Origin: Ruditapes philippinarum
Lineage: Eukaryota
Length of the DNA stretch: 64,000 nucleotides
Assembly: GCF_026571515.1 (NCBI RefSeq)
Contig: NW_026859228.1
Coordinates: 248,001 to 312,000 of the forward strand
Direction: 5' to 3'
Part shown: piece after piece, positions 12,374-59,712 of the stretch
Position numbering within the stretch: the stretch's first letter is position 1
Layout of the letters: each line of letters starts with the position of its first letter
Notes under the pieces: model-generated
Seen by the model: only the letters and a program-made list of their open reading frames with translations
What the model was told of the DNA's origin: nothing
The model's database searches: none
Position numbers and translations under genes: made by a program

Positions 12374-14105
12374 ATGGAGGTCCCTTGGAAATTAGATCTA
12401 GGAGCTGTAAGTGCCGAAGACTCGACATTAGTATGCCTCCCGTGTGATATTGATGGTTTGAAGGAACCTGCTTATGGCTTCTGCCAGGACTGCCAAGAGC
12501 ACTTATGTGAAACATGCTTCAAACACCATAGACGGCCACGCCAAATGAGAAATCATGTCCTTGTTGAAAAAGAATACATGCCAAAGACCCAGGTAAATGC
12601 ACCTACAACATCTGAAGATATGGAAGATTTTTGGACGAAACACCAAGACAAACCACTAGAATTCTATTGTAGGGATCACACATCTGTGGCTTGTTATGTG
12701 TGCGTTACATTAGAACATAAACAGTGTAACGTGGACTATATTCCTGATGTTTCTGGAAACCTGTCTGATGAGATGGCTGATATATTAGAACAAATGGAAT
12801 CGTTGATAACGAAATGTAAATCAAACATAGAATATGCTTGCAAAGCTGCGCAACATCTAGACCAAAGTCATGCAAAAGTTGTTGAAGATATCAAAGTCTT
12901 CAGGAAAGAGATAAATAAATGTTTGGACAGAATGGAAACCAGAATATTAAATGAAGCTGACACAATTGTAAAAGAAGCAAAATGTAAACAGGAACTCATA
13001 TTAAATGCTTGTTTAGAGATAACGGAAGAACTTGAATGTTCACATGCGTTGTTAAGGTCATTTAAAGAAGAGATCAAGCAAACTAAGCGTTTTATTAAGA
13101 TTAAAAACATTAGAAAAAGTCTGCCAATATTGACAGATAAGGAAAAGACTGTATTGCATGCAAATACAGCGAACGATTGTGTTCAATTTACCCGCAACGC
13201 AAGCATTATAGATTTTCTGAAGACTGAGAATAACTATGGAACATTGTCAACATTTGTGCAACCATACCCAGAAAGAGCAATAGATTTACAATATATAGAT
13301 ACAATAGACATGAAACAGACATCAGACAAAGAAAAATGTAACATTACCGGTATGGTTTTGATTGCTCCTACAAAAATGGTTGTTGCTGATAACAGTAACA
13401 AAAAATATAAAACTGATCGACGTTCAGAAAAATGTAATTGTAACTGTGGTAGAGATGTCTTCACGTCCGTTGGATATTATAACTCTTCCAGAAAAAAAGC
13501 TTGCTTTAACTTTGTATGGTGAAACAATTGTTCAGATATGGTCTTATTCTGATGCAAAACTTTCATTAGATCAGTGTATAGATGTAAGAGAATCGTGCAA
13601 TGGTGTTGCTTATAGCCAGGATAAATTGGTTGTCTCTTGCAAAAAATCAAAGAAAATAATCATTTTGAATTTTCAAGGAGAAATTCTCGAAGTTCTTGGT
13701 TCTCCTACTTTATTCTATGGGCCTGTCAGAATTTTCATCAGAAGGGATGAAACGTTTATATATGTATCGGATGGGGTTTGGAGACAAAATAGCAAGGTTT
13801 TGAAAATTGATTGGAAAGGAAATGTCAAAACCATTTTTGAAGACCCAAGATATAATATTCCTTACGGTCAACAACAATTAGAAGATGAGACTATACTGGT
13901 ATGTTACAAAGACAGTAACACTATTCTGAGACTGTCAAGCAGCTTAAAGAGATGTGATATTATTGGACTAGAGAAAGCAAATATTTATTTTCCAACAGCT
14001 TTAACATACTGTGACAGAGAACAAAAACTGTATGTTAGTTGTTCATCCGATATAGGGTCACCGCAGGCTGATACTGTTAAAGTATTCCATGTAAAGTGGA
14101 TATAA
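12374..14105 (+). pseudogene. TRIM-like gene copy 1 (subtype A), frameshifted
   Basis: ORFs 12374-13522 and 13362-14105 join into the full paralog if one extra A is removed from the A-run near 13400-13405. The first Cys of B-box2 is Trp (FWTKH; the other copies have FC or YC). The frameshift could be a homopolymer error. Confidence 0.85.
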
Positions 14106-16201
14106 TCATTACAAAGAAAGAAATATGTGGTCATCAATCTATGTATAAAATTGATAATTTCTTTAGTTTGTTTTCTTCATATACTTTATGGATATACTGA
14201 TATTTAATTGCACAGCTCAAGGGTTTAATGATCTGCAGAGAGTCACTGAGTTGAAGGAAACTGCCAAAATAACCTTAGAATATATATAATAATAACTCTA
14301 TAAGATATTTATGCTGTTGAACACTATAATTGCAAAATTAATTGGCCATTTCCTTATATGTCCCCCTTCGCTAGGTTTATATGCCGTGTCAGAGACTGTT
14401 CATTATGAAAATCTTCCAAAAACCTAAAAAGACAAGTCAGTTGTGTAATAATTGTGTAGATCTCGAATCAGAGCTACTCCATGTTATGCTCAAATGACCA
14501 ATGAGAGCCAAATAAATTGTGAAAAAGCCTGTCATTTTAACGTATGAAATGAATCATAAAAAGTTAAAATTTCTGTGCTCAAATACTGATATGGTTAGAA
14601 AAACAGAAAATATATGTTGTAATATGTTGAAAACTAGAAACAATGCTTTGTAATGTAAATCTACTTAATGTTTTGAATTATGTATATATGTTGAACTTTA
14701 TATTGTACAGTGTACGCTTTTACCTATTACTGAATGTTTTAATTTTGTATTAGAGTCTGAATTCTTCAATCAATCATTTAGGTTTTACTAACTTAGAAAT
14801 TCCTTGCTAATCCGTTTGCTAAAATTCCTTAGTGATAATACATAGTTTATGGTGCTTTTAACTCTTGTGCATCTTGTTCTGCTTTTTTCAAAATCATGTC
14901 TCATTTTATCTTTTCATCTATCACTTAACCCTAGTAATATCATACAGTGGCTGTCAAAATTAACAAGGAATGTCTTACCATTATTTTGAGGATTATACAT
15001 GTATGTAAGAACGAGACAGTCTGAACATAATACATATATATAAGCACAATGTAGTCTCTTACAATTCTACCCTAGCATGGATTTTTGCAAAGTATATACA
15101 TGTAAATAAATGTCATGTTATGAGGTGATGCATTGTGCTCTGGTGAGAGTTTAATAAAAATATAAATAAATACACTATTGTTTTAATGACCATGAATATG
15201 CCTTTTAAATTGTTCCTAGAGATGAAATAATCTCAAATTCCATGTTTCTCATGGACATACTTATTACTTAAATAAACCATCATCACCATTGTCACATTTG
15301 ACTTCCAGTTTTCATAAATCTAAGATTCTTGTCTCTTGTCAACTTTGTGTTAATAATCAATTGTTTGTACGGTGCTGATACATTTCCTTCCACAGGCAAT
15401 ATATAAGACATCTGCATTCTCTAGTTTTCTTGTGGAAGAAAATTTAGTGTATCATGGCCCTTGTGACCTCGAACATCAATCGATCATCAACCGACAACAC
15501 CCTTAGCAGATTAATCGATGAAGTTCCAACTACTCTTCTGAGTTATGATTCGTGGCCAATGTAAGGTTCCTTTTCATCTTATGCGGCATTAAATACATGT
15601 GTACACGTTCTATCACATTATGAATACGGGTACGATGAAGACAATAAGCTTACTTGAATTGAATGTTATAATGTTTTTCATCTTCACGGGACACTATGAC
15701 TGTAAAGCAACCTATTAATATTCCAGTAGTAAATACATACGGCATTCAAGAAAAAAGGTTCCTATCAAAAGGAAAAACTTTTCAATCATTTTGTTTATCC
15801 CTGTGTGTGAGTTAAGATTGAATGCTTCACAAAAAAGTCATTTTGTCATTACATAATCAATGTTCAAGAACAACATAAAATACAAGTGTGATTGTTAATC
15901 GATTTATTCCATAAATCTTCATGATACTATGTGATTGTAACTCTCTTGATAAAATTATTTTTGAGACAACTGGAATAAAGTCATGAATAATATGTTACGT
16001 AGAATCATTTTTAATATTGAAAATAAATAATATCACAGTTTTTCACTTTGTATTAATATGGTTTTGCATCACATCTATGTTAAGTCTTAAACATCCCATT
16101 GTTCATGTAGAATGACATAACATTCATCTTGAAAATAGAATGTTTGAAGTATCACAGTATTAGGTCAAGATGACGAAGGTCTTTTAAAATGTCATCAAAG
16201 G

Positions 16202-22351: not shown

Positions 22352-23753
22352 GTAAGCAAATTTAGAATATTAAATCTAATATTCACCTAAGAATAAAATC
22401 ATATTTCGTACGTATGCAAACAAAAGGGACTTTAGTACATAATGTATTTTTCGTCCTAAAAATAAAATAGTATATTTCAAGTTTTCACAACAATATCACA
22501 ACTTTTTGTTTTGTTTCAATTTTATTTTTCATTTTTCTAAATCATAAACATATCGTGGTAAAAATATAAGAAATTTTGTTAATTGTGATACATGTTTGTA
22601 AATATGCTTTATAAATATCAAACAAGTAACGTGACAATTAATGAATATTTTACTTACTTACGTACACTGATAATCTTATCAGGTGACTAAATATTTACCA
22701 AACGACCAGAGGGTAAACAAGATTTCTACCTTTATTTTTATTTTCTTGTGTAGGAAATAAAAAGCACACATGGTATCTTTGTTTGAAGGATAGTTACATG
22801 ATATGCTCTCTTTAATTAAAATATAAATAACCTTTCAAAATTAAACATTATGTGTGACAGTCTATATACTCTTCATTATTGTATTTTTAACCTTTACCTC
22901 TAGACAACCGGGATATCGTTACTTGAAGTCAGTACCTATCGATTTACGATTTGATCACTTAAAATATTGAGTTGACAATTTGTGCACCATATTTCTACAG
23001 TATCGACCCAATTTGTTTTGTCTTAAACTGATTGCATGCTACTGATTAAATATTATCTAATTGTTGTTATTTCTGAAAGTAAATACTTGTTGAAAACAAA
23101 TAGCACCCTTTACAATTTTTTTTTTTCATAAGAATTCATTTCAATAAAAATGATAGCAAATATCTCTCGGAAGACAGTGCCCAGGCCTTTCAAGCAGATA
23201 TTAATAGAAATAAATTGTATAAAATTTTATGTAAAAAATGACAAAGTTATTTATCTAATATGTATACTAATACGAAGAGTCTTAAAGTTATTACAAATAA
23301 ACCTGATTTTTCATATATGTGTATAGACAATTTTAATTAGTTAGTGTTAATTTCATCTTCAAATTATGCACGAACGGAAGTCGACATGGCTTTCTTTTGG
23401 GTGACCCCCAATTATTTTCTCTTACTTTAAGATCATGATAGATTAAAATGAATTCGATATGCGATTATATTCTGCTATATGTAACACTAGCATACGCCTT
23501 TAATTGAAATACAAGTAGAAAAACTAACATATAAAGTTTTAGAATTAAAGTATAAATTTATAATATTTTACTTATCAGGTCAAATATTTTAAAAGGGTAT
23601 TTCTGAAAATATGCCAGTAATTTGATTGCCCATCAGAAATTGATACTAGTGTTTTAAATGTAAATGGATCGGTCGAATTCCATGTAATTAACATCATAAT
23701 TGATATGATTTTGAAAAAAAAATTCTTCACATATCATATTTTTTCAGACAGGA

Positions 23754-25484
23754 ATGGAGGTTCCTGGTAAATTAGGTCTAGGAGATCTCAATGATGATGA
23801 CTCGAAATTAATATGTCTTCCATGTGACAGTGATGGTTTGAAGGAACATGCTTATGGCTTCTGCCAGGACTGCCAGGAGCATCTATGTGAAACATGCTAC
23901 AAACATCATAGACGCGCTCGTCCATTTAAAAACCATGTACTCATTGACAAAGAATCAATGCCAAAGACCCGGGTTAATGCACCTACAAAATCTGAGGATA
24001 CGGCCGACTTTTGCACGAAACACCAAGATAAACCATTAGAATTCTATTGTAGGGATCACACATCTGTGGCTTGTTATGTGTGCGTTACATTAGAACATAA
24101 ACAGTGTAAGGTGGACTATATTCCTGATGTTTCTGAAAACCTGTCTGATGAGATGACAGATATATTAGAACAAATGGAAACATTGATAACAAAATGTAAA
24201 TCGAACGTAGAATATGTTAGCAAAGCTGCGCAAAATCTAGACCAGAGTCATGCTAAAGTTGTTGAAGATATCAAAGCCTTCAGGAAAGAAATAAATGAAT
24301 GTTTGGACAGAATGGAAACCCAGATATTTAAAGAAGCTGACACAATTTTAAAAAGTGCAAAATGTAAACAGGAAACCGTATTAAATGCTTGCTTAGAGAT
24401 ACGTGAAGAACTTGAATGTTCACATTCGTTGTTAAGATCATTACAAGAACAGAACAAGCAAAATAAGCTTTTTATGGAGATTAAAAACGTCGGAAAACGT
24501 CTACCGATACTGACAGATAAGGAAAAGAACGTTTTGCATGCAAATACAGCAAATGATTGTGTTCAATTTACCCGCAACACAAGCATTATAGATTTTCTTA
24601 GGACTGACAAAAATTATTGGACATTGTCAACATTTGTACATCCATGCCCAGATAGAGCAATAGATTTACAATATATAGATACAATAGACGTGAAAATGAA
24701 ATCAGAGAAAGAGAAAAGTAACATTACTGGTATGGTAATGATTGCTCCTACAAAAATTGTTGTTTCCGATAACACTAACAAAAATATAAAACTGATTGAC
24801 ATTGAGAAAAAAGTAGTTGTGGCAGAGGTAAAAATGTTTTCAGGTCCCTCAGATGTTATAACTCTTCCAGACAAAAAGCTTGCTGTAGCTTTTTTCAATG
24901 AAATGTTTGTTCAGATAATGTCTTATTCTGACGCGAAACTGTCATTAGATCAACGTATAGATGTAAAAGAAAAGTGCAACGGTGTAGCTTATAGTCAGGA
25001 TAAATTGGTTGTCTCTTACAATAAATCAAAGAAAATAATCATTTTGAATCTTCAAGGAGAAATTCTCAATGTTCTTGGTTCTCCTGCTATATTCTATGGG
25101 CCTATCAGAGTTTTGTTCAGCAAGGATGAAACGTTTATATATGTATCAGATACAGATGGGAGTCAAAATAGTAAGGTTTTGAAAATGGATTGGAAAGGAA
25201 ATATTAAAACCGTTTTTGAAGAACAAACGTATAAATTTCCTTACGGTCAACAACAATTAGAAGATGAGACTATACTAGTGTGCTACAGAGGCAGTAACAC
25301 TATTCTGAGACTGTCAAGCAGCTTTAAGAAATGCGATATTATTGGACTAGAGAGAGCAAATATTTATTTTCCAAAAGCTGTAACATACTGCGACAAAGAA
25401 CAAAAACTGTACGTAAGTTGTTCATTAGAGAAAGAAGACTGGCGGGCTGATATTGTGAAAGTATTCCATGTTAAATGGATATAA
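23754..25484 (+). CDS. RING-less TRIM-like protein, 576 aa (B-box1, B-box2, coiled coil, NHL-like beta-propeller); copy 2 (subtype B)
   Basis: Intact ORF. B-box1 pattern CLPC..FCQDCQEHLCETCYKHH..H; B-box2 pattern CTKH..LEFYCRDH..ACYVCVTLEHKQC; helical middle region; propeller-type repeats (ITGMVMI..VVSDNTNKNIK, GPIRV..IYVSD, FPYG, FPKAV). Splice acceptor ttttttcag just before the ATG. Confidence 0.93.
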   Translation: MEVPGKLGLGDLNDDDSKLICLPCDSDGLKEHAYGFCQDCQEHLCETCYKHHRRARPFKNHVLIDKESMPKTRVNAPTKSEDTADFCTKHQDKPLEFYCRDHTSVACYVCVTLEHKQCKVDYIPDVSENLSDEMTDILEQMETLITKCKSNVEYVSKAAQNLDQSHAKVVEDIKAFRKEINECLDRMETQIFKEADTILKSAKCKQETVLNACLEIREELECSHSLLRSLQEQNKQNKLFMEIKNVGKRLPILTDKEKNVLHANTANDCVQFTRNTSIIDFLRTDKNYWTLSTFVHPCPDRAIDLQYIDTIDVKMKSEKEKSNITGMVMIAPTKIVVSDNTNKNIKLIDIEKKVVVAEVKMFSGPSDVITLPDKKLAVAFFNEMFVQIMSYSDAKLSLDQRIDVKEKCNGVAYSQDKLVVSYNKSKKIIILNLQGEILNVLGSPAIFYGPIRVLFSKDETFIYVSDTDGSQNSKVLKMDWKGNIKTVFEEQTYKFPYGQQQLEDETILVCYRGSNTILRLSSSFKKCDIIGLERANIYFPKAVTYCDKEQKLYVSCSLEKEDWRADIVKVFHVKWI

Positions 25485-26771: not shown

Positions 26772-27361
26772 TATTATATTTCCACGGACAATATATCCAT
26801 TCTGCTTTCTCTAGTTTTCTTGTTAAAATAACTGTATGAAGACTCTTGTGACCTCAAATCTCAATGGCAACACCTTAAGCAGTTGAATCATTGAAGTTGC
26901 AACTGCTCTCTAGATGGGCTATGATGGGTGCTCAATCACACAAAAAAATGTCTTTTTGTCATCACATTTTTATGAAAACATAATCAATGTCCAAGAACAA
27001 CATAAAAGATATAAGTTTGATTCTTAATAAATTTTATTTCATAAATTATCATGAATATATATAATTGCCAACTTTTTCCATTCATAACTCCCTAGATAAA
27101 ATCACTTTTGAGACAACTGGACTCCAATTCAGTCATAAATTACATGCTTGTGTTACAATTATTTTTTTAAATAAATACATTGAAAATAAATAATATCACA
27201 GTTTTTCACTTTGTATTAATATGGTTATGCATTACATCTATGTTAAGTCTAAAACTTTTCATTGTTCATGTAGGACGACATAACTTCGTTTTGAAATTTA
27301 AAATGTTTGAAATATCACAGTCAGTTAAGATGATGAAGGTCTTTTAAAACGTCTTTAAGGG

Positions 27362-28656: not shown

Positions 28657-28772
28657 CTCTTTTGAAACTTTTCCTCCTTTGTCTTTATCTTTAGCTGGTG
28701 TAGGGGCTTTCTTATCAGGTGCTTTTGCGGCTCCTTTATCCCCTGTTCCACTCTTACGTCCTTTACCATCAC
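28657..28772 (-). CDS. MYCBPAP: MYCBPAP-like Lys/Gly-rich exon (unit 2): DGKGRKSGTGDKGAAKAPDKKAPTPAKDKDKGGKVSKE
   Basis: 116 nt, bounded by ttttgtag and GAG|gtatta, phase 1-0, compatible with the next exon. Confidence 0.65.
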
Positions 28773-33735: not shown

Positions 33736-35434
33736 ATGGAGGTTCCTGGTAAATTAGGTCTAGGAGATCTAAATGATGATGACTCGACATTAATATGTCT
33801 TCCATGTGATATTGATGGTTTGAAGGAACCTGCTTATGGCTTCTGTCAGGACTGCCAGGAGCATCTATGTGAAACGTGCTACAAACATCATAGACGTGCA
33901 CGTCCATTTAAAAACCATGTACTCATTGACAAAGAACCCATGCCAAAGACCAGGGTAAATGCAGCAACAACATCTGAGGATACAGCCGACTATTGCACGA
34001 AACACCAAGACAAACCACTAGAATTTTATTGTAGGGATCACACATCTGTGGCTTGTTATGTGTGCGTTACATTAGAACACAAACAGTGTAAGGTGGACTA
34101 TATTCCTGATGTTTCTGGAAACCTGTCTAACGAGATGACAGATATATTAGAACAAATGCAAGTATTGAAGCAAAGCTTCACAAGAACTAGACCAGAGTCA
34201 TGCCAAAGTTGTTGAAGATATCAAAGTCTTTAGGAAAGAGATAAATGAATGTTTGGACAGAATGGAAACCAGAATATTAAAGGAAGCTGACACAATTGTA
34301 AAAGAAGCAAAGGGTAAACAGGAAACCATAAAAGCTGCTTCTTTAGAGATAACTGAAGAACTTGAATGTTCACATTCATTGTTAAGATCATTAAAAGAAC
34401 AGAACAAGCAAACTAAGCTTTTTATCGAGATTAAAAACGTCAGAAAAAGTCTGCCAATACTGACAGATAAGGAAAAGAACGTATTGCGTGCAAATACAAC
34501 AAACAAATATATTCAATTTACCCGCAACACAAGCATTATAGATTTTCTTAAGACTGATAATAATTATGGAACATTGTCAACATTTGTACAGCCGTGCCCA
34601 GATAGTGTAGTAGATTTACAATATATAGATACAATAGACATGAAACAGACATCAGAAAATGAAAAATGTAACATTACTGGAATAATAATGATTGCTCCTA
34701 CGAAAATGGTTGTTTCTGAAAGCAGTAACAGAAATATAAAACTGATCGACGTTGAGAAAAATGTAGTTGTAACAGAGGTAAAGATGTGTTCACGTCCGTT
34801 GGATGTTATAACTCTTCCAGAAAAAAAACTTGCTGTAACTTTGGCCGATGAAATGTTTCTTCAGATATTGTCTTATTCTGACGCGAAACTTTCATTAGAT
34901 CAACGTATAGATGTAGGAGAAAAGTGCGCTGGTGTTGCTTATGGCCAGAATAAATTGGTTATCTCTAGTCGGGCTTCAAAGAAAATAATCATAATGAATC
35001 TTAAAGGAGAAATTCTCAATGTTCTTGGTTCTCTTGCTATATTCTATGGGCCTATTAGAGTTTTGATAGGCAAGGATGAAACGTTTATATATGTATCGGA
35101 TACAGATTGGAGTCAAAGTAGTAAGGTTTTGAAAATGGATTGGAAAGGAAATGTTAAAAGCGTTTTTGAAGACCAAAGTCACAAATTTCCGTACGGTCAA
35201 CAACAATTAGAAGATAAGACTATACTGGTATGTTACAGTGAAAGTAACACTATTCTGAGACTGTCAAGCAGCTTAAAGAAATGTGATATTATTGGGCTAG
35301 AGAAAGCAAATATTTATTTTCCAAAAGCTGTAACATACTGCGACAGAGAACAAAAACTGTGCGTAAGTTGTTCATCAGAGAAAGATGACTGGCGGGCTGA
35401 TATTGTGAAAGTGTTCCATGTTAAATGGAAATAA
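33736..35434 (+). pseudogene. TRIM-like gene copy 3 (subtype B), frameshifted and lacking the putative first exon
   Basis: A 60-nt segment of copy 2 is replaced by 28 nt at about 34159-34186 (net -32 nt), splitting the gene into ORFs 33736-34215 and 34253-35434. About 3 kb of upstream sequence, including the conserved donor site, is deleted. Confidence 0.85.
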
Positions 35435-43600: not shown

Positions 43601-45779
43601 TTCTGTAACCGAAACTAATTAGCCTTTGCCCCGATTATAGTGCCAGGCCAGCCTATGTCTTTTCTGACCAGGCTCAACACTGTCGATAGCTCATTTTTTT
43701 ACTTTGTTTTTGAAGCCCATAAAACTTTAAAAGGACTGTTCCAAATTCAAAGCGAAGGAAATCTACAGAAATTTAGCAGGTAAAGGCCATAATACCTAAA
43801 ACCTCAATCTATTGAACTAAATGCTAAAGTGGTTTAGCTAAAATGCTAAATTTAAATTCATAGTCTACCATAAATGCTTTGTCTTTAGCGCTCGTTTGCA
43901 TTCTAAAACTTTGTTGATTACATTGAAGAAATTTAAATCAAAGCGATAAATCTACAATATATTTTATGATACTTTACAGTAACGTACATCACAATTTATT
44001 CCCTTTAAGTGTGCTAAGTCATTTAGCAACGCGAAATCTGTGAAAGAGAAAATTCTTCAATTAAAGATTTTATGCATCACTCGAACACATTATATTATGT
44101 TTTTTATAAAATATTAAACATCTTTAAAACTTTTCTACTGTCTTAATGACCGAAGGTCAGTTATTACTAGAAAACCATTGATTGAATATACATAATTTTT
44201 ATTCTAACCAGTAAAACATATGTTTACATGTTAAAGCATTCTCAGAGAGACAAGTCTACACTGAGTTAAACCTACATGACTATTGAGAGAATATCATATA
44301 ACACAACATAAACAAGATTTTGTATTTATAAAAGGCCTTTTTATTTTAATGCTGCATGCCTTCAGATAAGCCAAAATATTTTTAAAAAATCAAACTTAAA
44401 CTGAAACTGAAATTTTAAGAAAAACAAAAAGATTAAAGATAAAAGTATTAATTTCTATGTTATGTGAGTTAATTTACTGTTTTGCAGTATTTTTCACCAT
44501 ATTTCTACTACGTTACTATTAAACACAGTAAAGGCTATTTTTGCACATTTTACCCTTTTTGTAACATACATGGGTTATATTTGCCGTTTGCAATGTGTAA
44601 CTTATTTTCTTTGTTCACTTAACAATATTTTACTTCTTAATTCATTTTTGTTTTCGTGAAAATTAGCATGAATCTGGAGGCGTGCCACTTTAAAATAAGA
44701 TAGACAATGCAACGTTCAATAAGAGTGCTTCCCCTGTCAAGTTTATTTAAACTTCCGCGTTCCAAAGTAAAATATTCACCTATTTATTACAAGGTAAGAA
44801 ATTTAAATTGATTTAAATTAATATTATATCAAATCAAATTTTACAAGTATGCCAACACGATTTATTTTAGTAGATAATGTTATTGTCGTCATAATGATAA
44901 AAAGGTATATTTTAAATTTTTCAAAACAAGTCAAATACCTAAACTTTTTGTTTGTTTCTTTTTTATATTTTCATTTTTATCTTCCTAAATCATAAAGCAT
45001 AAGATGAAAATCAAAGCAAACAATTAACAATATGCGAAATTTTACTAATTGTGTTAAATGTTTGTATGTTTGCCAAATAAAATATTAAACAAGTCACGTG
45101 ACACTAAATATTTTACTTAAGTATTATGATATAAATTCATACGCATTGGTCTCCCTTTGCTTCGCTATATAGCGTATTAGCGTAGCAGGTAAAAATCACT
45201 GTGAGGCGTTTGACAATGATAATCTAATCAGTTAACAAAAACATTTGCCGAAAGACCAATCGGTAAACAAAATATTAGATTTTTAACTTGTTTCATTTTC
45301 TTGTTTATGAAATAAACAAACAGTCAATGGATCTCTGTTTGAAGGATACTTAAATGATATTCTCTCTTTAATCAAAATATAAAATAACCGTACAAAATTA
45401 AATTTTAAGGACTCTTTACCAGTATTTTCCCTTTACCTCCAGACAACTGGTATAGAGTTTAAATCTTTTTGATATTTGATGTCAGTATGAAACGGGTTAC
45501 GACTGAATATTGTCTAAATATTGAGTTATCTAATGAATTATGATGCAATACATTTGAATTTTGTCTAAATATTGAGTAAGCTAATGATTCAACACATTCT
45601 ATCTCACAGTAAATACAACCAAAGTGTTTTCTTAAAATGATGGTATTACATGTACATGGTTAAATACTGTCGAAAAGTGAATTCTTATTTGAAACTAATA
45701 GCACCCTCCACAAATTTCTCTATCTTTTTTATTTGATAAGAATTCAATAAAAATGATACTCTGCACATCGGCCGTTTGT

Positions 45780-48650
45780 TTTACTACGGGCCACGTTCTT
45801 TAATATACAGTCACAGGCTAAGACCTTTCACCAGGGGCTTACCTCCTAGGACCTTCTATACTACCCAAATATACTTCAACTTATTTATGATACATGTCAA
45901 TACAAAATCAAATAATTCTAACACAAAAAATATTTATGATACAATTAATCACTGGTCCTTCTAATTCGATACATTCAGACAAATACTAGTAGAAGGGGAA
46001 ACAACTTAGCCCGCTATCCGGAACTTACACTTGGATCACTGAATGAGTTTGGACTGAAACCTCGCATTAAATACCCAAAAGTAGTGAATATGATAAATAA
46101 TTTTGATATCTTTTGTTTTACTGAAACAAAGCTGAACGACACTGATGTTATATCTTTACGAAACTATGAGTTTATTTCTTAACCAAGAGAACAATCTTCG
46201 CGGAATAGGTGTATTTGTACACAATAATGTTTGTCGTTACTGTAGAAAGTGATTGTGAGTACATTTTGTGGATAAAAATAATCAAAGATATTTTATGTTT
46301 AGATGAAGACCTTCTTTTCACTATTATGTATGTTTTGCCTGAACAATCATTGTTTTACAATACTGCTTTATTATCACTTATGGAGCAAGAAATTGTTCAA
46401 AATTGTAGCTTACATAATTATGTTTTCTTGACTGGCGATGCAAATGCACATACAGGAACGTTACCCGATGACCTAGAAAATGACACGTTTTTAGCAAAAA
46501 AAGAGGTTCTCGCACGATAAAAAGAAAAATCAAACAGGACTAAAATTAATAAACATTTGTAATTTGTTCATATGTAATGGCAGAAAAGGAAAAGATGCCA
46601 ACATTGGCAAATGTACTTTTCGCAACGTTTCGGTAACTGACTATTGTATTTCAAGTGTTTATTACAAAAAATCTCGATTTTGAAATCATCGAAGTAGACA
46701 GTCTGTGTATTCCTAGGGTATTATCAATAAACTTAAATATTATGAAAAATGTGCGAATAAATGAATTTAAAAACAAAGAAAGCGTTCCGCCAAGCATCAC
46801 TTATAAAATGGTAAAGTAACAAAAGTCATGAATTTATATCGAATTTAGACAATTCTGATATGAATGAAATAAATATTTTTAGAAAACTGTACAGCCGACA
46901 ACACCAAATTTTTTTTTAAAAATATGGTATCTGAAAACATCAATGCTGTATTTCCGTTTTTTTTGGGGTTAAAAATTTTCACTCAAAGTCACATCTCAAT
47001 TATAATAACCTGTGTCTGAAACAAAAAAGAGGGAAAAAAACACGAAACGAATTGTGATTCGGCCCTATATGTAGGAACGCTTGCATAAAATACAATTTAG
47101 CTCGAAAACGGAATAATAAATGGAGATCAGACATTTATAGATTAAACCTAAAGGCATCTAGCAAAAATTACAAAAAAATGTAATGAATACGAGTTGAATA
47201 CGTAGCTTCACCATGAAAAATACCCCCTCCCCTCTATATGATATTTATGATAACTTCAAAAATATTAATTTGTCTGCCGAAAATGAGGCTAACGAATTGC
47301 CGCCAAATTTCGTATTAAATGACGTTGATGAAATTCTAAATATGCTAATAACAAAGGAAGAAATTGAAAAAGAAAAAGATCTAAAATCAAACACTGGCAA
47401 ACCCCCATCAGAAGACATAATATTTAATGAATATCTAAAAAGCTCAAAATGTTTAATGATACCTATCTATGAATTGTTTTTTAATAAAGTTTTAGATGCA
47501 GGAAATTTGCCTGACAGCTAGCTTGTAGGTACAATTAAACCGGTTTTTAAAAATAAAGGTAATCATGTATAATCATATTAAATCGTTTATATCAATAAAT
47601 AATTCAGCATTTTTACAAGCGAAAAAGGCTTCGCCAAGGGGATCATTTGATCATTTATCTTCCCTGATAATTAGTTTTTATCTTAATGACCTTTAACATT
47701 TTTGAATGTCACGCGGTAATGAAGTAATTGAGGTAAAAGCTAACAGTAATGAAACACACGTTCTTTTATCTATATATCTATTGAAAGTTCTAATTATTGT
47801 ACGCAGACGATACTTTTAAAAATTCTCAACGAATTCAATAACCATTGTAAGTACTGAAAGCTAAAAATAATACAGAAAAAATGATATGAAATTTGGCACA
47901 CAAAAAATCGTCAATACTCTTTTCTCATTGGAAATACATACTTCTTAAGAACAATCACCAAAACTAGAAAAAGTACCCCATTCTTTATACTATATATCGA
48001 GCAAACTTGTAACCCATAAAAATACAAAATTAGCATAACCCTGTTACGTGATGCTTTATTCAAATACTTTTAAATTATTTTAATTATTTAAATGGATGAA
48101 ACAAAATAATAACAATACTGGCTACTCTTACCTGCGGCTACAACAAAAATCTTTGTCGAGCAATAACACAGTGAAAACGATCAAGCAAACTTTAGCTAAT
48201 CAATTTCTCTAAAAGTGGTCATCAGATTTGACAATATCAAATAAAGGTAAAAAAATATGCTGTTTTTAAAAAGGAATTTAAATTTAAAAACTACTTAAAG
48301 AAATTACCACGATATAAAGGAAATAAGATTCATAAATTTAGGACATCAAACTATAAATTACCAGTTGAAACCGTGCGATCGAAAACCAGACGCATTGAAT
48401 ACATGCAGTGAAAGAAAATGCTTAAATGCCTCTCGGATATAGTAGATGAGTTCCATACCCTTACTCAATGTAAATATTATGAGGACCCCAGAATAAATAT
48501 CTAAAATTATTCCATTATGAAAGACCAAATATAATCAAATATTTTGAGCTAATGAACACCGTCGATGAGACAACTCATCTATGACTTTATAATCTAATAT
48601 CAGTTATCCTTAACTCAACTTGAGATTAAGATAAATTCAATAAACCTACC
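45780..48650 (+). mobile_element. Decayed non-LTR retrotransposon (APE endonuclease plus RT) in the putative 5' intron of copy 4
   Basis: Broken-frame motifs: LGSLN.FGLK..., FDIFCFTETK, VFLTGDANAHTG, ITKEEIEK..D.IFNEYLK..LFFNKVLDAG.LP..IKPVFKNKG, YADD (tacgcagacgat about 47800), and a C-terminal KLPVET..C..C..DEFH..QC. Boundaries approximate. Confidence 0.85.
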
Positions 48651-49031
48651 GGTATGTCAATTGTCATAATTAAAATAATATTTGATTGACTATTTGTTAA
48701 GATCATAGATACATTTTATCGCGCCTTTCCATAACTTTACCATGGAGTGTGTCCGTGAACCAAACATACTATTGGTGTGATGATGAATATTAAAAGTTAC
48801 AATATAAATTTAAAATCTAAAGTTTATGAATATTTATACAGTAAAACAGAAAACAATGAATTCTTCAATTGATATGTACGGTTGTTAAGCAGGAACTGAA
48901 TAAACTGATAAAGTGTTAAACGCAAAGTAATAGGTTTATCTCATCCCATGTATATAAGACAACAATTTAAATGATTTAGAAATAAATATCAATATAAATG
49001 AAGAACTTATATTTTATATTTTTAGGCTGGG

Positions 49032-50921
49032 ATGGAGGTCCCAGGGAAATTAGATCTAGGAGCTCTAAGTGCCGAAAACTTAACATTAGTATGTCTCCCG
49101 TGTGATAATGATGGTTTGAAGGAACCAGCTTATGGCTTCTGCCAGGACTGCCAAGAGCACCTATGTGAAACATGCTTTAAACATCACAGACGGCCACGCC
49201 CAATGAGAAATCATGTCCTTATTGACAAAGAATTCATGCCAAAGACTCAGGTAAATGCACCTACAGCATCTGAGGATACGGCCGACTTTTGCAAGAAACA
49301 CCAAGACAAACCACTAGAATTCTATTGTAGGGATCACACATCTGTGGCTTGTTATGTGTGCGTTACACTAGAACATAAGCAGTGTAGGGTGGACTATATT
49401 CCTGATGTTTCTGGAAACTTGTCTGACGAGATGACTGTTATATTGGAACAAATGGAATCGTTGATTACAAAATGTAAATCAAACATAGAATATGTTAGCA
49501 AAGCTGCGCAAAATCTAGACCTTAGTCATGCTAAAGTTGTTGAAGATATCAAAGTCTTCAGGAAAGAAATAAATGAATGTTTGGACAGAATCGGAACAAG
49601 CATATTAAAAGAAGCTGACACAATTGTAAAAATTGCAAAATGTAAACAGGAAACCGTAAAAGCTGCTTGCTTAGAGATAAATGAAGAGCTTGAATGTTCA
49701 CGTTCGTTGTTAAGTTCATTAAAAGAACAGAACAAGCAAAATAAGTTTTTTATTGAAATGAAAAACGCTGAAAAATGTCTTCCAATACTGACAGATAAGG
49801 AAAAGAACGTATTGCATGCAAATACAGCAAACGATTGTATTCAATTTACCTGTAACGCAAGCATTATAGATTTTCTGAAGACTGAGAAAAGTTATGGAAC
49901 ATTGTCAACATTTGTACAGCCGTGCCAAGATAGAGCAATAGAATTACAATATATAGAAACAATAGACATGAAACTGAATTCAGAGAAAGAAAAAAGTAAC
50001 ATTACTGGTCTGGTAATGATTGCTCCTACGAAAATGGTTGTTTCTGATAACAGTAACGAAAAAAATATAAAACTAATTGACGTTGAGAAAAAAGAGGTTG
50101 TAACAGAGGTAAAGATGTCTTCAATGCCACTTGATGTTATAACTTTTCCAGAAAAAAAGCTTGCTGTAACTTTAAAAGGTGAAACGTTTGTTCAGATATT
50201 GTCTTATTCTGACGCGAAACTTTCATTAGATCAACGTATAGATGTACGAGAAAAGTGTAATGGTGTTGCTTATAGCCAGGATAAATTGGTTGTCACTTGC
50301 CAAATATCAAAGAAAATAATCATTATCAATCTTGAAGGAGATATTCTCAATGTTCTTGGTTCTCCTGCTATATTCTATGGGCCTATGAGAGTTTTTATCA
50401 GCAAGGATGAAACGTTCATATATGTATCGGATAGAGATTGGAGACAAAATAGCAAGTTTTTGAAAATTGATTGGAAAGGAAATTGTTAAAACCGTTTTTG
50501 TAAGTTAATCTTAATTGTATCACTTGAAAATTTTATCGACATATAGAGGAGTTTTTAAATTTTACAGCAAATCTATATGGAAGATAGAGACTATAATAAT
50601 TTGCACTGATTTATTGTTACAGAGACCAGTGGATACAGAAATAAGTGAGACATGTCAAGCCTAGACTTAAAGAAATGGATGTGGTAAGTTTGATTGGACA
50701 AACAAGACTGAGATGAGGAGCTAACAGTCTCATTTTCGGACAATGGATTCAATAGGAGGAGAAAAAAGGCTGTAACACTATGACTTGTGACAGAGACGAA
50801 AAGAATAGTACTGCATATGCGGTCTGTTCAGAAACTCAGAACCACCAGAGTAACACAAGAAGATCTGGAGAGGAGAGGGCTGATATTGTGAAAGTATTCC
50901 ATGTTAAATGAGGATATATAA
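49032..50921 (+). pseudogene. TRIM-like gene copy 4 (subtype A 5' end); 3' end garbled, possibly intact in the real genome
   Basis: Clean 485-aa ORF to 50489. The stretch 50490-50920 follows the paralog 3' end but is riddled with small insertions; the 3' flank after it is clean again. Confidence 0.75.
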
Positions 50922-51417: not shown

Positions 51418-54400
51418 TTAAATTATGATGATTATAGAGTAAATAAATGTATATTTGCATGGGCCGTGGATAATGGAAATACTTGATGTACAAATTGATA
51501 TTTTATTGCAGAGAATAGTTAAATTCGCTAAGACTAAACATGAACTCTCAATAACCGTTTTAACGCAAGGAATTAGAACAATTTACTGATGTTTTATTTG
51601 AATGTCATGCAGCCCACTGATGTGAATGGATGTCACCTTAATAAGCTTGGGGTATATAGAACTTTCAAACATTCTTATGCTATTGAACACTATTGCAAAA
51701 TTATTTTTTCCATTTTCGTCATGATATATCTCCCTTCTCTAAGTTTAGTTGCAGTGTGGCGCCAATTAGGCCATAGATTGGGAGATATAAAAAAATCTTC
51801 CAGAAACATAAAAGCATGTCAGTTGTGTGATAATTGTGTTGAATCAGAGCTGCTCCATGTTATGCTTAAATGTCTTATTATGTTAGGGAGAAACAAATAA
51901 TGTTTCATTAACCTGTAATGTCAACTGTAATTTTAATGTGTTAAATGTTTCAGAAAAAAATAATAAAAATTTTGATATGGTTAGAAAAACACCTGTTGTA
52001 ATATGTTGAAAACTAGAAACAATGCTCTATACAATTTGTCTACTTAATGTTTTGAATTTTGTATATATGTTGAACTCTACATTGTACAGTGTAAGTTTTT
52101 AGCTATTACTATATGTTTTAATTTTGTATATAGTCTGAATTATCAGTCGTTAAGGATTTACTATGTTAGAAATTCCTTGTTAATCTGTTTGTTACTAGTC
52201 CTAAGCGATGATACATATTTTATGGGGCTTATTACCCTAATGCATCTAGTGATTATTTTCCAAATCAAATCCAATTTTATCTTTCATTCATTTCTATTTT
52301 AACTAACTTATAAGATTACACTGGAAATATAATAAAGTTGCTGTCTAAAATTAGCAAGGAAAATGCCTAACCTTTATTGTGAGGATTATGTGTAGGAATG
52401 TGAAAGTCTGGACATAATACCTAATTATATAAATAGTCTTTTACAATTCTACCCCACAATGGCTTTGCGCGATGTATATATATATGTATATGTAATTTTA
52501 TGTATTGATGTGATTAATTGTATAATGATGATATTTGAATGAAAGATAAATAAATAAATGTTAAAGACCAAGCTTATGTCTTTTTAATCATGTTTAGTGG
52601 TGAAATGCTCTCGAATATCGTGTCTCTCATTGACATATTCAATGAAACCATAATCACGATAGTCACCTTTGACTTGCAGTTTTCTCTTACATTTTCTCCA
52701 CTTTGTGTACAGTGCTCTGGTCTGAACAGTGCTTATGTATTCTATTTCCACAGACAATAATTATATCCCTTAAAGACGTCTGCTTTCTCTAGTTTTCTTG
52801 TTAAAATAACTGTATGAAGACTCTTGTGACCTCGAATCTCAATGGCGACACCTTGAGCAGTTGAATTATTGAAGTTCCAACTGCTCTCTAGATGGGCTAT
52901 GATGGGGGTTATTGCAAGGTTCGTTTTCATCAGATGTGGCATTAAACACATGTTTACGCGGTCTGTCACACTATAAATAAGGGCACGCTGGACAACATTA
53001 AGCTTACTTGAATTGACTGTTATAATGTTTTTCATCTTCAAAAGACACAAATGCTGTAAAACAAAATTTAAATATTTCAGCAGTTATTAAATGTTAAATC
53101 TCAGCTTTCTATCAAAAACAAAAACATTTCAATTATTATGTTTACCTCTGTTGGTTTAGGTACAATGCTGCACAAAAAAGTCTTTTTGTCATCACATTTG
53201 TATGTAAACATAAACAATCCTAGACACAAATGAGGTTGTTCTTAACAAAAACTTAACAACAAAAAAAAACCATAAAACAACAAAAAACGTATCTTTATTC
53301 CTAACATTCTAATGTAAGGTGATAATATTATATAATTGTGTAAATGAGCAAAGTTAATCTTCACATAACGGTAAAAGTTTCGGAATTTATTCACTATACT
53401 TTCACAAAATAGCATTTGATCCAAATGAACTTAGGGAAAAAATAGTAAACAGATCGTTTCATTTCTTACAAACTGTGATCAGAGGAAGCGTAAAGTTTTT
53501 TTTCTATAGAACAACACAAACACATTTGTTTTTGTATGTCACTTCTTAAATATATGGTGTTTTATATGTACAATGTTGTGTACAATGTTTACAAATATGT
53601 GAATGGCTAGCATATAAAATACTGTAATTTGTCTTTCATATGACTTGACTCTAAAGATCCGAATAATTTCTAAAGTTTGCTCTTGAGAAAACAATATATC
53701 AAAATTGCAATTCAAACTAATACTGGCCATTTGACACATATTTGTTTACAGTTGCTCTAAAAAGTGAGCAGTTACATTTAAGAAAACTGATTGGGCAAAA
53801 CAATAAATCCATTACCAGTATATAAGGTTTATTACTGTTAACAGCAGACAAACGGATTATTGTCTGTAACAAAGGAAGTGACGATATCCTGAAACTGTTA
53901 AGCAGCTTAAAACATATGACATTTTTGGACCAACGAGAGCAAATATTTATAACCTTTAAGCATAATGTGATAGAGAAACATAATTTTACGCTATTTGCTC
54001 AATAGAAAAAGAAATATGATAGGCTAATATTTTCTAAATATCAGTGTGAACTAAACTAGAATGATACATAGGGATATGTCGTAATTGAAAAAAGCTCTAT
54101 CATCCGAGATACCGGTAATTAAATAAGTCGATTCACACGAATTAATGACATTGTATCGACTATTTATCAATATTTGTTGACATTATCCACATGCTTTATT
54201 ATTCTCATTAGTTTTATTGAATTGCGAGTATCTTATTCACAGACTAAAAAGAACCTTTATCGCGACTGTCACAATTTCCTTACAGTTTTCATAACTTCTA
54301 AAAGATTTTATATTTCCCAACTTCGTGGTTAGAATCAACGTTCAGAAAAGTGCTTATTTCAAAGACCAATACACTCTTTTTCGTAGATTCTGTTTTCTTT

Positions 54401-57981: not shown

Positions 57982-59712
57982 ATGGAGGTTCCTGGTAAAT
58001 TAGGTCTAGGAGATCTAAATGATGATGACTCGACATTAATATGTCTTCCATGTGACAGTGATGGTTTGAAGGAACCTGCTTATGGCTTCTGTCAGGACTG
58101 CCAGGAGCATCTATGTGAAACGTGCTACAAACATCATAGACGTGCACGTCCATTTAAAAACCATGTACTCATTGACAAAGAATCCATGCCAAAGACCAGG
58201 GTAAATGCAGCAACAACATCTGAGGATACGGCCGACTATTGCACGAAACACCAAGACAAACCACTAGAATTTTATTGTAGGGATCACACATCTGTGGCTT
58301 GTTATGTGTGCGTTACATTAGAACACAAACAGTGTAAGGTGGACTATATTCCTGATGTTTCTGGAAACCTGTCAGATGAGATGGCCGATATATTAGAACA
58401 AATGGAATCGTTGATTAAAAAATGTAAATCAAACAAAGAATATGCTTGCAAAGCTGCGCAACATCTAGACCAAAGTCATGCAAAAGTTGTTGAAGATATC
58501 AAAGTCTTCAGGAAAGAGATAAATGAATGTTTGGACAGAATGGAAACCAGAATATTAAAGGAAGCTGACACAATTGTAAAACAAGCAAAATGTAAACAGG
58601 AAACCGTATTAAATGCTTGTTTAGAGATAACGGAAGAACTTGAATGTTCACATTCATTGTTAAGGTCATTTAAAGAACAAAACAAGCAAAATAAGCTTTT
58701 TATCGAGATAAAAAACGTCGGAAAAAGTCTGCCGATATTGATAAATAAGGAAAAGAATGTATTGGATGCAAATACAACAAACGAATGTATTCAATTTACC
58801 CGCAGCACAAGCCTTATAGATTTTCTTAAGACTGTGAATAATTATGGAATATTGTCAACATTTGTACAGCCGTGTCAAGATAGAGCAATAGATTTACAAC
58901 ATATAGAAACAATAGACATGAAACAGACATCAGAAAAAGAAAAATGTAACATTACTGGTATGGTTATGATTGCTCCTACGAAAATGGTTGTTGCTGATAA
59001 CATAAACAAAAACGTAAAACTGATCGACGTTGAGAAAAACGAGGTTGTAACAGAGGTAAAGATGTCTTCACATCCGTTGGATGTTATAACTCTTCCAGAT
59101 AAAAAGCTTGCTGTAACTTTGTTGGATGAAACGTTTGTTCATATATTGTCTTATTGTGACGCGAAACTTTCATTAGTTCAACGTATAGATGTCAGAGAAA
59201 AGTGTCATGGTGTTGCTTATGGCCAGGATAAATTGGTTGTATCTTGCAATAAATCAAAGAAAATAATCATTTTGAATCTTCAAGGAGAAATTCTCGATGT
59301 TCTTGGTTTTCCTGCTATCTTCTATGGGCCTCGCAGAGTTTTGATCAGCAAGGATGAAACGTTCATATATGTATCGGATACAGATGGGAGTCAAAATAGT
59401 AAGGTTTTGAAAATGGATTGGAAAGGAAATATTAAAACCGTTTTTGAAGAACAAAGTTATAAATTTCCTTACGGCCAACAACAATTAGAAGATGACACTA
59501 TACTAGTGTGCTACAGACACAGTAACACTATTCTGAGACTGTCAAGCAGCTTAAAGAAATGCGATATTATTGGACTAGAGAGAGCAAATATTTATTTTCC
59601 AAAAGCTGTAACATACTGCGACAAAGAACAAAAACTGTACGTAAGTTGTTCATCAGAGAAAGAAGACTGGCGGGCTGATATTGTGAAAGTATTCCATGTT
59701 AAATGGATATAA
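57982..59712 (+). CDS. RING-less TRIM-like protein, 576 aa; copy 5 (subtype B)
   Basis: Intact ORF colinear with copy 2. Same B-box1, B-box2, coiled coil and propeller architecture; acceptor tttttttcag before ACAGGAATG. Confidence 0.93.
   Translation: MEVPGKLGLGDLNDDDSTLICLPCDSDGLKEPAYGFCQDCQEHLCETCYKHHRRARPFKNHVLIDKESMPKTRVNAATTSEDTADYCTKHQDKPLEFYCRDHTSVACYVCVTLEHKQCKVDYIPDVSGNLSDEMADILEQMESLIKKCKSNKEYACKAAQHLDQSHAKVVEDIKVFRKEINECLDRMETRILKEADTIVKQAKCKQETVLNACLEITEELECSHSLLRSFKEQNKQNKLFIEIKNVGKSLPILINKEKNVLDANTTNECIQFTRSTSLIDFLKTVNNYGILSTFVQPCQDRAIDLQHIETIDMKQTSEKEKCNITGMVMIAPTKMVVADNINKNVKLIDVEKNEVVTEVKMSSHPLDVITLPDKKLAVTLLDETFVHILSYCDAKLSLVQRIDVREKCHGVAYGQDKLVVSCNKSKKIIILNLQGEILDVLGFPAIFYGPRRVLISKDETFIYVSDTDGSQNSKVLKMDWKGNIKTVFEEQSYKFPYGQQQLEDDTILVCYRHSNTILRLSSSLKKCDIIGLERANIYFPKAVTYCDKEQKLYVSCSSEKEDWRADIVKVFHVKWI

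What the first reader, a model, noticed from the sequence alone, without database searches (positions are those of the whole stretch)
12374..59712. Tandem array of RING-less TRIM-like genes with an invariant B-box and a hypervariable propeller face: candidate diversified immune sensor locus
Seen: the B-box2 segment HQDKPLEFYCRDHTSVACYVCVTLEHKQC is identical in all five copies. In the propeller the same few positions change radically between copies 1/2/3/4/5: S[R/G/R/M/H]P; [YG/FN/AD/KG/LD]E; C[N/N/A/N/H]G; [KK/NK/RA/QI/NK]SKK; GP[V/I/I/M/R]R; D[GVW/TDG/TDW/RDW/TDG]; CY[KD/RG/SE/-/RH]SN. Known: in NHL-type propellers (TRIM71, Brat) the residues around the P-x-G turn and after the second strand form the ligand/RNA-binding top face, and bivalves have expanded B-box/TRIM-like families. 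Inference: the scaffold is constant and the binding surface is diversifying, as in pathogen-recognition or antiviral restriction factors. Lacking a RING, they may act as swappable adaptors.
Basis: partly seen in the sequence, partly recalled or inferred. Interest (0 to 1): 0.82.

Follow-up and report, generated by a model that had tools for sequence, protein, structure and literature searches.

The report
Diversifying RING-less TRIM-NHL gene array in clam
A Manila clam locus carries five tandem copies (two intact, three broken) of an intronless Brat-like B-box/coiled-coil/NHL-propeller gene. Its zinc-finger scaffold is conserved, while a few residues on the ligand-binding face of the propeller evolve under positive selection, as expected of a pathogen-recognition or other arms-race repertoire.

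Summary
Five direct tandem copies of a 576-aa single-exon gene lie at 12374-59712.

The genome is Ruditapes philippinarum. The window is part of an array of at least 15 copies on one contig, within a very large family.

The protein has B-box1, B-box2, a coiled coil and a six-bladed NHL propeller (TM 0.75-0.82 to TRIM2, Brat and Mei-P26). It has no RING, which is the Brat architecture.

My own codon site models, checked against IQ-TREE, reject neutrality on nine intact paralogs (M1a/M2a 2dlnL 64; M8a/M8 59). The signal is absent from the B-boxes and survives blade-by-blade trees, although recombination is detected. All seven sites with posterior above 0.95 lie in loops that by definition form the NHL top, ligand-binding face. 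Two other clades on other contigs repeat the pattern.

First readers of this scan flagged similar arrays elsewhere in this genome.

The parts
12374..14105 (+). Copy 1. A 1-nt insertion in an A-run near 13400 shifts the frame. Both halves are otherwise open (ORFs 12374-13522 and 13362-14105).
   Evidence: no stop codon in the frame-corrected reading
23754..25484 (+). Copy 2, an intact 576-aa gene. B-box1 is about 23814-23939, B-box2 about 24006-24107, the coiled coil about 24141-24548 and the NHL propeller about 24660-25478.
33736..35434 (+). Copy 3, disrupted by a 32-bp deletion after about 34168 at the start of the coiled coil. The downstream frame is open.
49032..50500 (+). Copy 4. It has an in-frame GAA insertion, a 1-nt T insertion near 50483 and a stop at 50489. 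Homology to the other copies ends at 50500 and resumes in the 3' flank at 50877, so the last ~93 codons are lost.
57982..59712 (+). Copy 5, an intact 576-aa gene, 87% identical to copy 2.
24021..24107 (+). The B-box2 core (residues 90-118 of copy 2). It is identical at the protein level in all five copies, with six silently varying codons.
24843..25445 (+). Span of copy 2 that holds the positively selected top-face codons: 364, 366, 423, 451, 469, 563 and 564, plus 381 at lower posterior.
23694..23753 (+). A polypyrimidine tract and cag (acceptor-like) lie immediately upstream of the ATG. This suggests a separate 5'UTR exon. The same context occurs in copies 3 and 5, with tag/aag variants in copies 1 and 4.
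   Evidence: sequence only; no RNA evidence

Best explanation
The locus is a birth-and-death tandem array of intronless, cytosolic, RING-less TRIM-NHL genes in the Manila clam. The architecture is Brat-like: B-box1, B-box2, coiled coil and a six-bladed NHL propeller.

Shown here:
- The zinc-finger and coiled-coil scaffold is under purifying selection.
- A few positions at the start of strand a and in the b-c loops of blades 2, 3, 4 and 6, all on the top (ligand-binding) face, are under recurrent diversifying selection.
- Copies are gained by segmental duplication, exchange sequence by recombination or gene conversion, and are lost by recent frameshifts and deletions.

Inferred:
- Each paralog dimerises through its coiled coil and presents propellers with a paralog-specific binding surface.
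- The moving target is most likely a pathogen-derived molecule, either viral or parasite RNA or protein, so the array would serve as a repertoire of intracellular sensors or restriction factors.
- Without a RING, they would act by sequestration or Brat-like translational repression, or by recruiting an E3 in trans, rather than by their own ubiquitin ligase activity.
For: Architecture and homology:
- Pfam, PDB profile, AF2 model and Foldseek results.
- No RING-pattern ORF in the window. RefSeq models of sister copies have the same ~576-aa length.

Array and family:
- At least 15 copies on contig C7715, and 76 scored genome hits out of 2365 first-look candidates.

Selection:
- Nei-Gojobori omega is 0.19 in the B-boxes, 0.45 in the coiled coil and 0.55 in the propeller.
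- My codon ML reproduces the IQ-TREE M0 lnL.
- M1a/M2a 2dlnL=64, M7/M8=77, M8a/M8=58.7, with omega about 5-6 for about 2.5% of codons.
- With segment-specific trees the signal is 0 in the B-boxes, 6.7 in the coiled coil, and 46.5 and 26.8 in the two propeller halves.
- With blade-by-blade trees the sum is 68.9 at 14 df (p=3e-9), and the same sites are recovered.
- At the seven sites the pooled synonymous rate is normal (0.90) while the non-synonymous rate is 6.6.

Location:
- 7/7 sites with posterior above 0.95 lie in bd-ba or bb-bc elements, against 0/159 elsewhere (Fisher p=0.002).
- Those loops define the top surface, which is the RNA-binding platform of Brat (PMC4015489).

Replication:
- Clades B and C on other contigs also show positive selection. 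Across clades, 15/15 sites above 0.95 are on the top face (binomial p=2e-6).

Context:
- TRIM2/3/71-like transcripts track disease tolerance or resistance in oysters (PMC9892467).
- A B-box orthogroup is expanded in bivalves (PMC8382680).
Against: - No expression, induction or ligand data could be obtained.
- Recombination among paralogs is significant (PHI-like p=0.0005) and can inflate site-model tests.
- Per-site tests with free synonymous rates are underpowered. Only residue 451 reaches p<0.001 and residue 513 p=0.02.
- Tree-free cross-clade pN/pS at the hot positions is only 0.9-1.3.
- The top loops as a class have omega 0.90, so much of the variability is relaxed constraint.
- The net charge of the top-face elements is only -1 to +5, not the strongly basic surface of the RNA-binding TRIM-NHLs, so the kind of ligand is open.
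- Three of the five window copies are broken.
- Posteriors are naive empirical Bayes, from 6-9 sequences per clade.
- The top or bottom assignment comes from the strand order of a predicted model, not from coordinates.
Confidence: 0.55

Rival explanations
1. The paralogs are diversified post-transcriptional regulators of endogenous or transposon RNAs. They would be Brat/LIN-41-like repressors whose top face tracks fast-evolving genomic parasites or lineage-specific mRNA targets, not pathogens.
For: The architecture is exactly that of Brat, and the selected face is the one Brat and LIN-41 use for RNA. The N-terminal half is most similar to TRIM28, a transposon-silencing cofactor. The intergenic units are full of repeats.
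Against: The top face is not clearly electropositive. Nothing here links these genes to transposons. Known TRIM-NHL regulators are single-copy and conserved.
Confidence: 0.2
2. There is no adaptive diversification. Recently duplicated, partly redundant copies drift under relaxed constraint on exposed loops, and the omega>1 class is an artefact of gene conversion, multi-nucleotide changes and small samples.
For: Recombination is detected. The top loops as a class have omega 0.90. Cross-clade tree-free pN/pS is about 1. Per-site tests are mostly non-significant. About half of the array copies carry stops or frameshifts.
Against: M8a, which allows a neutral class, is rejected at 2dlnL=58.7. The signal persists with separate trees for each ~40-codon blade. 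The bottom loops, equally exposed, have omega 0.45 and no selected sites. The synonymous rate at the hot codons is normal. Two other clades repeat the pattern. Even the disrupted copies evolved at omega 0.51, significantly below 1.
Confidence: 0.12
3. The paralogs are diversified protein-protein adaptors for a non-immune cellular process, such as stress proteostasis or cytoskeletal or vesicle regulation as for TRIM2/TRIM3, sub-functionalised among tissues.
For: NHL propellers also bind proteins. The top-face charge is weak and aromatic residues are frequent there. TRIM2/3 are the closest structural matches.
Against: Sub-functionalisation predicts purifying selection after divergence. It does not predict recurrent replacement at the same few positions in three clades.
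Confidence: 0.13

Closest known systems
Drosophila Brat (Brain tumor) and other TRIM-NHL proteins (TRIM2, TRIM3, TRIM71/LIN-41, Mei-P26; Marin's subfamily C, PMC3503706)
   Same: Like Brat, it has B-box1, B-box2, a coiled coil and a six-bladed NHL propeller, with no RING. The propeller superposes at TM 0.75-0.82. A family profile hits Brat NHL at 1e-5 and the TRIM3 B-box/coiled coil at 2e-6. The variable sites lie on the face that Brat uses for RNA.
   Different: The known members are single-copy, conserved developmental regulators with a basic top face. Here there are tens to hundreds of lineage-specific, intronless, tandem paralogs with positive selection on that face and only a weakly charged surface. 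There is no filamin domain.
TRIM5alpha/TRIM22 of primates and finTRIMs of fish (class IV TRIM with B30.2/SPRY)
   Same: These are tandemly duplicated TRIM genes with a conserved B-box/coiled-coil scaffold and positively selected surface loops of the C-terminal recognition domain. They show birth-and-death evolution with pseudogenes (PMC3845644; the finTRIM comparison rests on my own knowledge).
   Different: Their recognition domain is B30.2/SPRY, not NHL, and they carry a RING and act as E3 ligases. In primates the NHL-bearing TRIM2 showed no selected site inside a known domain.
TRIM28/TIF1-beta B-box/coiled-coil module
   Same: It is the best sequence match for residues 3-224 (E=2e-15), covering B-box1, B-box2 and the start of the coiled coil.
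   Different: TRIM28 has a RING and a PHD-bromodomain C-terminus and no propeller.
Bivalve TRIM-like and B-box expansions described in comparative genomics and transcriptomics
   Same: An expanded B-box orthogroup is reported in bivalves (PMC8382680). TRIM2/3/45/71-like transcripts are associated with Perkinsus, OsHV-1 and Bonamia tolerance in oysters (PMC9892467). RefSeq names sister copies 'TRIM71-like', 'TRIM45-like' or 'uncharacterized'.
   Different: In the papers I could search, none reports site-level diversifying selection focused on the NHL top face, or this venerid-specific array.

Membership tests
TRIM/RBCC family (canonical) | N-terminal RING finger | tested here: not met
   No Pfam RING hit. 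No RING-consensus ORF in any frame of the window. The ORFs start at MEVPGK, 20 residues before B-box1, and RefSeq sister models have the same length. An upstream coding exon cannot be fully excluded without RNA data.
TRIM/RBCC family (canonical) | B-box1 and B-box2 zinc fingers | tested here: met
   PF00643 scores above its cut-off at residues 85-116, and PF22586 matches residues 21-62. The family profile matches TRIM28 B-box1 (6o5k, 6e-7) and B-box1/2 plus coiled coil (6h3a, 2e-15). The Cys and His ligands are invariant in 21 paralogs.
TRIM/RBCC family (canonical) | Coiled coil following the B-boxes | tested here: met
   The AF2 model has helices at 130-232 and 236-265. Sequence matches extend into the coiled coils of TRIM28, TRIM3, TRIM25 and TRIM72. 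Dimerisation itself was not tested.
TRIM-NHL subfamily (class VII / Marin subfamily C, Brat-like) | C-terminal six-bladed NHL beta-propeller | tested here: met
   The model has 24 strands in six four-stranded blades, with pLDDT about 90 and N-terminal strand closure. Foldseek matches TRIM2 NHL at TMt 0.80-0.82, Brat at 0.75-0.77 and Mei-P26 at 0.78. The profile hits Brat NHL at 1e-5. PF01436 hits 3 of 21 paralogs but not copy 2 itself.
TRIM-NHL subfamily (class VII / Marin subfamily C, Brat-like) | Electropositive top surface that binds RNA | tested here: inconclusive
   The net charge of residues in top-face elements is -1 to +5 across nine paralogs. No coordinates were available for an electrostatic calculation, and RNA binding cannot be tested here.
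Diversifying immune-receptor-like gene families (TRIM5/finTRIM type) | A class of codons with omega>1, concentrated on the recognition surface | tested here: met
   LRTs; location. Caveats come from recombination and low per-site power.
Diversifying immune-receptor-like gene families (TRIM5/finTRIM type) | Expression in immune tissues, or induction or restriction activity on infection | not testable with these tools
Only indirect literature from oysters is available.

The most novel reading that the evidence does not exclude
Venerid clams have built a large intracellular recognition repertoire on the NHL propeller rather than on SPRY, LRR or Ig domains. Each RING-less, Brat-like paralog would use a positively selected top face to bind a different viral or parasite RNA or protein. 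It would then silence that target by Brat-type translational repression or sequestration. This would be an RNA-binding-protein-based antiviral system analogous to, but independent of, vertebrate TRIM5 and finTRIM.
Probability: 0.2. Interest if true: 0.85.

Novelty: new variant of a known kind. Interest (0 to 1): 0.62.

Why it matters
Bivalves lack adaptive immunity and rely on expanded innate gene families. TRIM-like genes are among the most expanded and the most often differentially expressed in disease-resistant oysters and clams, yet their recognition logic is unknown.

This work shows that positive selection is focused on the ligand face of an NHL propeller, repeatedly in several clades. 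That turns a vague 'TRIM expansion' into a testable model. It names which residues to swap, which paralogs to compare and which surface to probe for ligands.

It would also extend the TRIM5-type arms-race pattern to a different recognition fold, and to proteins without their own E3 ligase domain.

Tried and rejected
No RNA or read evidence was obtained, and the copy 1 frameshift could not be checked against reads.
The array on C7715 is therefore described only from the hit table and the loci already fetched.
- Per-site FEL-type tests with free synonymous rates had too little power with nine sequences. Only residues 451 and 513 reach p<0.05 among top-face sites, so I do not claim site-by-site significance.
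- Hypermutation at the hot codons is rejected. The pooled synonymous rate there is 0.90 of the gene average.
- Old, decaying pseudogenes as the source of the variability are rejected. Terminal branches of copies 1, 3 and 4 have omega 0.51, significantly below 1.
- A shared frameshift between copy 1 and the 382-aa paralog L014 is rejected. L014 lacks the extra A.
- Other genes in the intergenic units: six ORFs of 101-110 aa gave no Pfam hit.
- The 'hidden antisense gene' of note s1-803892: a tblastx comparison of the duplicated blocks 26939-32633 and 37696-43441 found no conserved stop-free ORF of 45 aa or more, and only one 33-aa HSP at 70% identity plus two at 42-47%.
- Literature: four searches found no paper on NHL-face positive selection in molluscan TRIM-like genes. 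The library lacks most subscription journals, so this is weak evidence of novelty.
- The costly representative-protein search, the complex prediction and the atlas search were not used. The family was already placed by Pfam, the PDB profile and the fold search.


Full report
**What is in the window**

ORF listing and tblastn with the intact protein find five + strand copies of one gene at these positions:
- Copy 1: 12374-14105
- Copy 2: 23754-25484
- Copy 3: 33736-35434
- Copy 4: 49032-50500
- Copy 5: 57982-59712

A self-comparison of the window shows these are not just repeated genes. They are direct segmental repeat units of 9-15 kb whose non-coding flanks are also 85-90% identical. The window has no N.

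Copies 2 and 5 are intact 576-aa single-exon ORFs. The other three are disrupted:
- Copy 1 has one extra A in an A-run near 13400. Both halves are otherwise open, so a homopolymer assembly error cannot be excluded.
- Copy 3 has a 32-bp deletion after about 34168.
- Copy 4 has a 1-nt insertion near 50483. Its last ~93 codons are replaced by about 376 bp of unrelated sequence, and homology resumes in the 3' flank at 50877.

In a frame-corrected alignment, the 29-residue B-box2 stretch at residues 90-118 is identical in all five copies. Six of its codons differ silently. This points to purifying selection on the protein rather than recent homogenisation of the DNA.

**Source and size of the family**

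A search of the window's own assembly places the window at C7715:248001-312000 in a 1.4-Gb genome. It finds about 15 copies on the + strand of this contig between about 140 and 320 kb, roughly half of them with stops or frameshifts. It scored 76 hits at E<1e-93 out of 2365 first-look candidates.

The word-based protein search names the sister copies as Ruditapes philippinarum RefSeq proteins. They are labelled 'uncharacterized', 'TRIM71-like', 'TRIM45-like' or 'TRIM33-like'. The nearest relatives outside the species are Mercenaria proteins at 51% identity or less. The array is therefore a venerid-lineage expansion.

Two other first-reader notes of this scan (s1-810581 and s1-794088) flagged similar arrays on other pieces of this genome.

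**What the protein is**

- Pfam finds B-box2 above its cut-off and a B-box1-type finger at residues 21-62.
- A profile of 21 paralogs matches the TRIM28 B-box1/B-box2/coiled-coil module (2e-15), TRIM3 (2e-6) and the Brat NHL domain (1e-5).
- The NHL repeat model PF01436 hits 3 of the 21 paralogs.
- An AlphaFold2 model built on that alignment has a long helical hairpin at 130-265 and a C-terminal domain with pLDDT about 90. That domain has 24 strands in six four-stranded blades, closed by the N-terminal strand 303-312.
- Foldseek against the PDB matches the TRIM2, Brat and Mei-P26 NHL propellers at target TM 0.75-0.82.
- No RING is present. Pfam finds none, no RING-consensus ORF occurs in any frame of the window, and an acceptor-like ttttcag lies directly before the ATG, suggesting only a 5'UTR exon upstream.

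The architecture is that of Drosophila Brat, a RING-less TRIM-NHL (listed in parentheses in Marin's subfamily C).

**Is the propeller face diversifying?**

Pairwise Nei-Gojobori omega on nine intact paralogs of this clade is 0.19 in the B-boxes, 0.45 in the coiled coil and 0.55 in the propeller.

PAML and HyPhy are not installed, so I wrote Goldman-Yang site models. My M0 likelihood reproduces IQ-TREE's GY+F3X4 value to the second decimal (-8770.01). With all branch lengths optimised:

| Comparison | 2dlnL |
|---|---|
| M1a vs M2a | 64.0 |
| M7 vs M8 | 77.4 |
| M8a vs M8 | 58.7 |

About 2.5% of codons fall in a class with omega about 5-6.

Sites with naive empirical Bayes posterior above 0.95 are 364, 366, 423, 451, 469, 563 and 564. 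Residues 381, 354 and 201 are near 0.9.

**Robustness**

A PHI-like four-gamete test shows recombination or gene conversion among the paralogs (p=0.0005), and segment trees disagree. A single tree could therefore inflate the tests. I refitted with separate trees.

Four segments:

| Segment | M1a/M2a 2dlnL |
|---|---|
| B-boxes | 0.0 |
| Coiled coil | 6.7 |
| Propeller, first half | 46.5 |
| Propeller, second half | 26.8 |

Seven pieces of about 40 codons, blade by blade:
- Blades 2, 3, 4 and 6 are individually significant (2dlnL 12.5-23.4).
- The sum is 68.9 on 14 df (p=3e-9).
- The same sites reappear.

Other checks:
- Pooled over the seven sites, the synonymous rate is 0.90 of the gene average and the non-synonymous rate is 6.6. 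Local hypermutation is therefore not the cause.
- Per-site tests with a free synonymous rate are underpowered with nine sequences. Only residue 451 reaches p<0.001 and residue 513 p=0.02.
- As a class, the top loops have omega 0.90, against 0.35-0.45 for the bottom loops and strands.

The honest summary is a mostly relaxed top face with a few positions above 1.

**Where the sites lie**

The strand order of the model, together with the NHL consensus (P-x-G entering strand a, V-x-D ending strand b), assigns each blade's strands a to d.

[quoted passage not shown] They also show that the top surface is Brat's RNA-binding platform (PMC4015489).

- All seven sites above 0.95 lie in top-face loops or within two residues of them, and none lies among the 159 other propeller residues (Fisher p=0.002; against the bottom face alone p=0.016).
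- Mean posterior omega is 1.02 in the top loops and 0.42 in the bottom loops.
- I could not compute distances, because the tool returns no coordinates.

**Independent replication**

Two other clades of the family lie on other contigs and are about 50% identical to this one. I analysed them the same way.

| Clade | M1a/M2a 2dlnL | M8a/M8 2dlnL | Candidate sites |
|---|---|---|---|
| C | 46.2 | 48.8 | ten of eleven in top-face elements, one in the inter-B-box linker |
| B | 7.0 | 7.7 | four, all in top loops |

- Across the three clades, 15 of 15 sites above 0.95 and 22 of 23 above 0.8 are on the top face, against 42% expected (binomial p=2e-6 and 6e-8).
- The same loops recur: d1-a2, b2-c2, b4-c4, d4-a5 and b6-c6.
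- In a tree-free cross-validation, sites chosen in the other clades show pN/pS 0.9-1.3 in the test clade, against 0.50-0.57 for the rest of the propeller.

**The disrupted copies**

In a two-ratio branch model, the terminal branches of copies 1, 3 and 4 have omega 0.51. This is not different from the background of 0.39 (p=0.07) and is clearly below 1 (p=7e-6). These copies were functional until recently. That fits birth-and-death turnover, or an assembly error in the case of copy 1.

**Interpretation**

Shown:
- A tandem, recombining, turning-over array of Brat-like RING-less TRIM-NHL genes.
- A conserved zinc-finger and coiled-coil scaffold.
- Recurrent positive selection at a few positions of the top face of the propeller.

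Inferred:
- The paralogs differ in ligand specificity and are chasing a fast-evolving target.
- A pathogen-derived ligand is the most economical reading. This is the pattern of TRIM5-type factors, and TRIM2/3/71-like transcripts track disease tolerance in oysters.
- However, nothing here shows expression, induction or binding.
- The weak net charge of the top-face elements (-1 to +5) leaves RNA versus protein open.

Rivals:
- Diversified regulators of endogenous or transposon RNAs.
- Non-immune protein adaptors.
- Relaxed constraint with an inflated test. The last is disfavoured by the M8a rejection, the blade-wise trees, the contrast with the equally exposed bottom face, and the replication.

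**Novelty**

TRIM-like and B-box expansions in bivalves are known, and RefSeq already models the sister genes. The new element is the site-level result on the NHL top face in a RING-less family. In primates, positive selection in TRIMs sits in B30.2 domains, and the NHL-bearing TRIM2 shows none inside its domains. I found no paper reporting this for molluscs, but the library is incomplete. I class it as a new variant of a known kind.

**Limits**

There is therefore no RNA or read evidence and no full map of the array.
- The site models are my own implementation, validated only at M0.
- Posteriors are naive empirical Bayes.
- The top or bottom assignment rests on a predicted structure.

Noticed in passing
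window 2489-2776 and 43277-43393 (+): Degenerate fragments of a distant propeller C-terminus (35% and 46% identity to residues 465-570 and 530-570 of copy 2) lie inside the repeated intergenic block. The ancestral repeat unit may already have carried a relic of an older paralog.
   Followed up: partly
window 32761-33314: A 146-bp tandem repeat, 3.8 copies at 90% match, lies about 400 bp upstream of copy 3. It is not seen upstream of the other copies.
   Followed up: no
window 36106-36429 and 51589-51900 (+): Paralogous ORFs of 107 and 103 aa lie downstream of copies 3 and 4. They carry a Cys-rich motif (C-x2-C ... H ... C) and have no Pfam hit. They may be a relic of a mobile element.
   Followed up: partly
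window 44000-48900: The unit between copies 3 and 4 is about 5 kb longer than the others. It holds ORFs at 46209-46520 and 47213-47521 with no Pfam hit, probably an insertion of a degraded mobile element.
   Followed up: partly
window 26939-32633 versus 37696-43441: Note s1-803892 proposes a hidden antisense gene with duplicated 3' exon cassettes here. A tblastx comparison of the two blocks found no conserved stop-free ORF of 45 aa or more, and only one 33-aa minus-strand HSP at 70% identity (28444-28542 / 39198-39296) plus two weaker HSPs at 42-47%.
   Followed up: partly
copy 2 residues 201, 210, 213 (window about 24354-24392): Three positions in the coiled coil have raised posterior omega (0.73-0.90), and the coiled-coil segment alone gives M1a/M2a 2dlnL=6.7, p=0.035. 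This recalls the coiled-coil selection seen in TRIM5 and TRIM25, but it is marginal here.
   Followed up: partly
upstream of each ATG (e.g. window 23694-23753): An acceptor-like polypyrimidine tract and cag/tag lie 6 nt before the start codon in all five copies. This suggests that the whole CDS is one exon preceded by a spliced 5'UTR exon.
   Followed up: no
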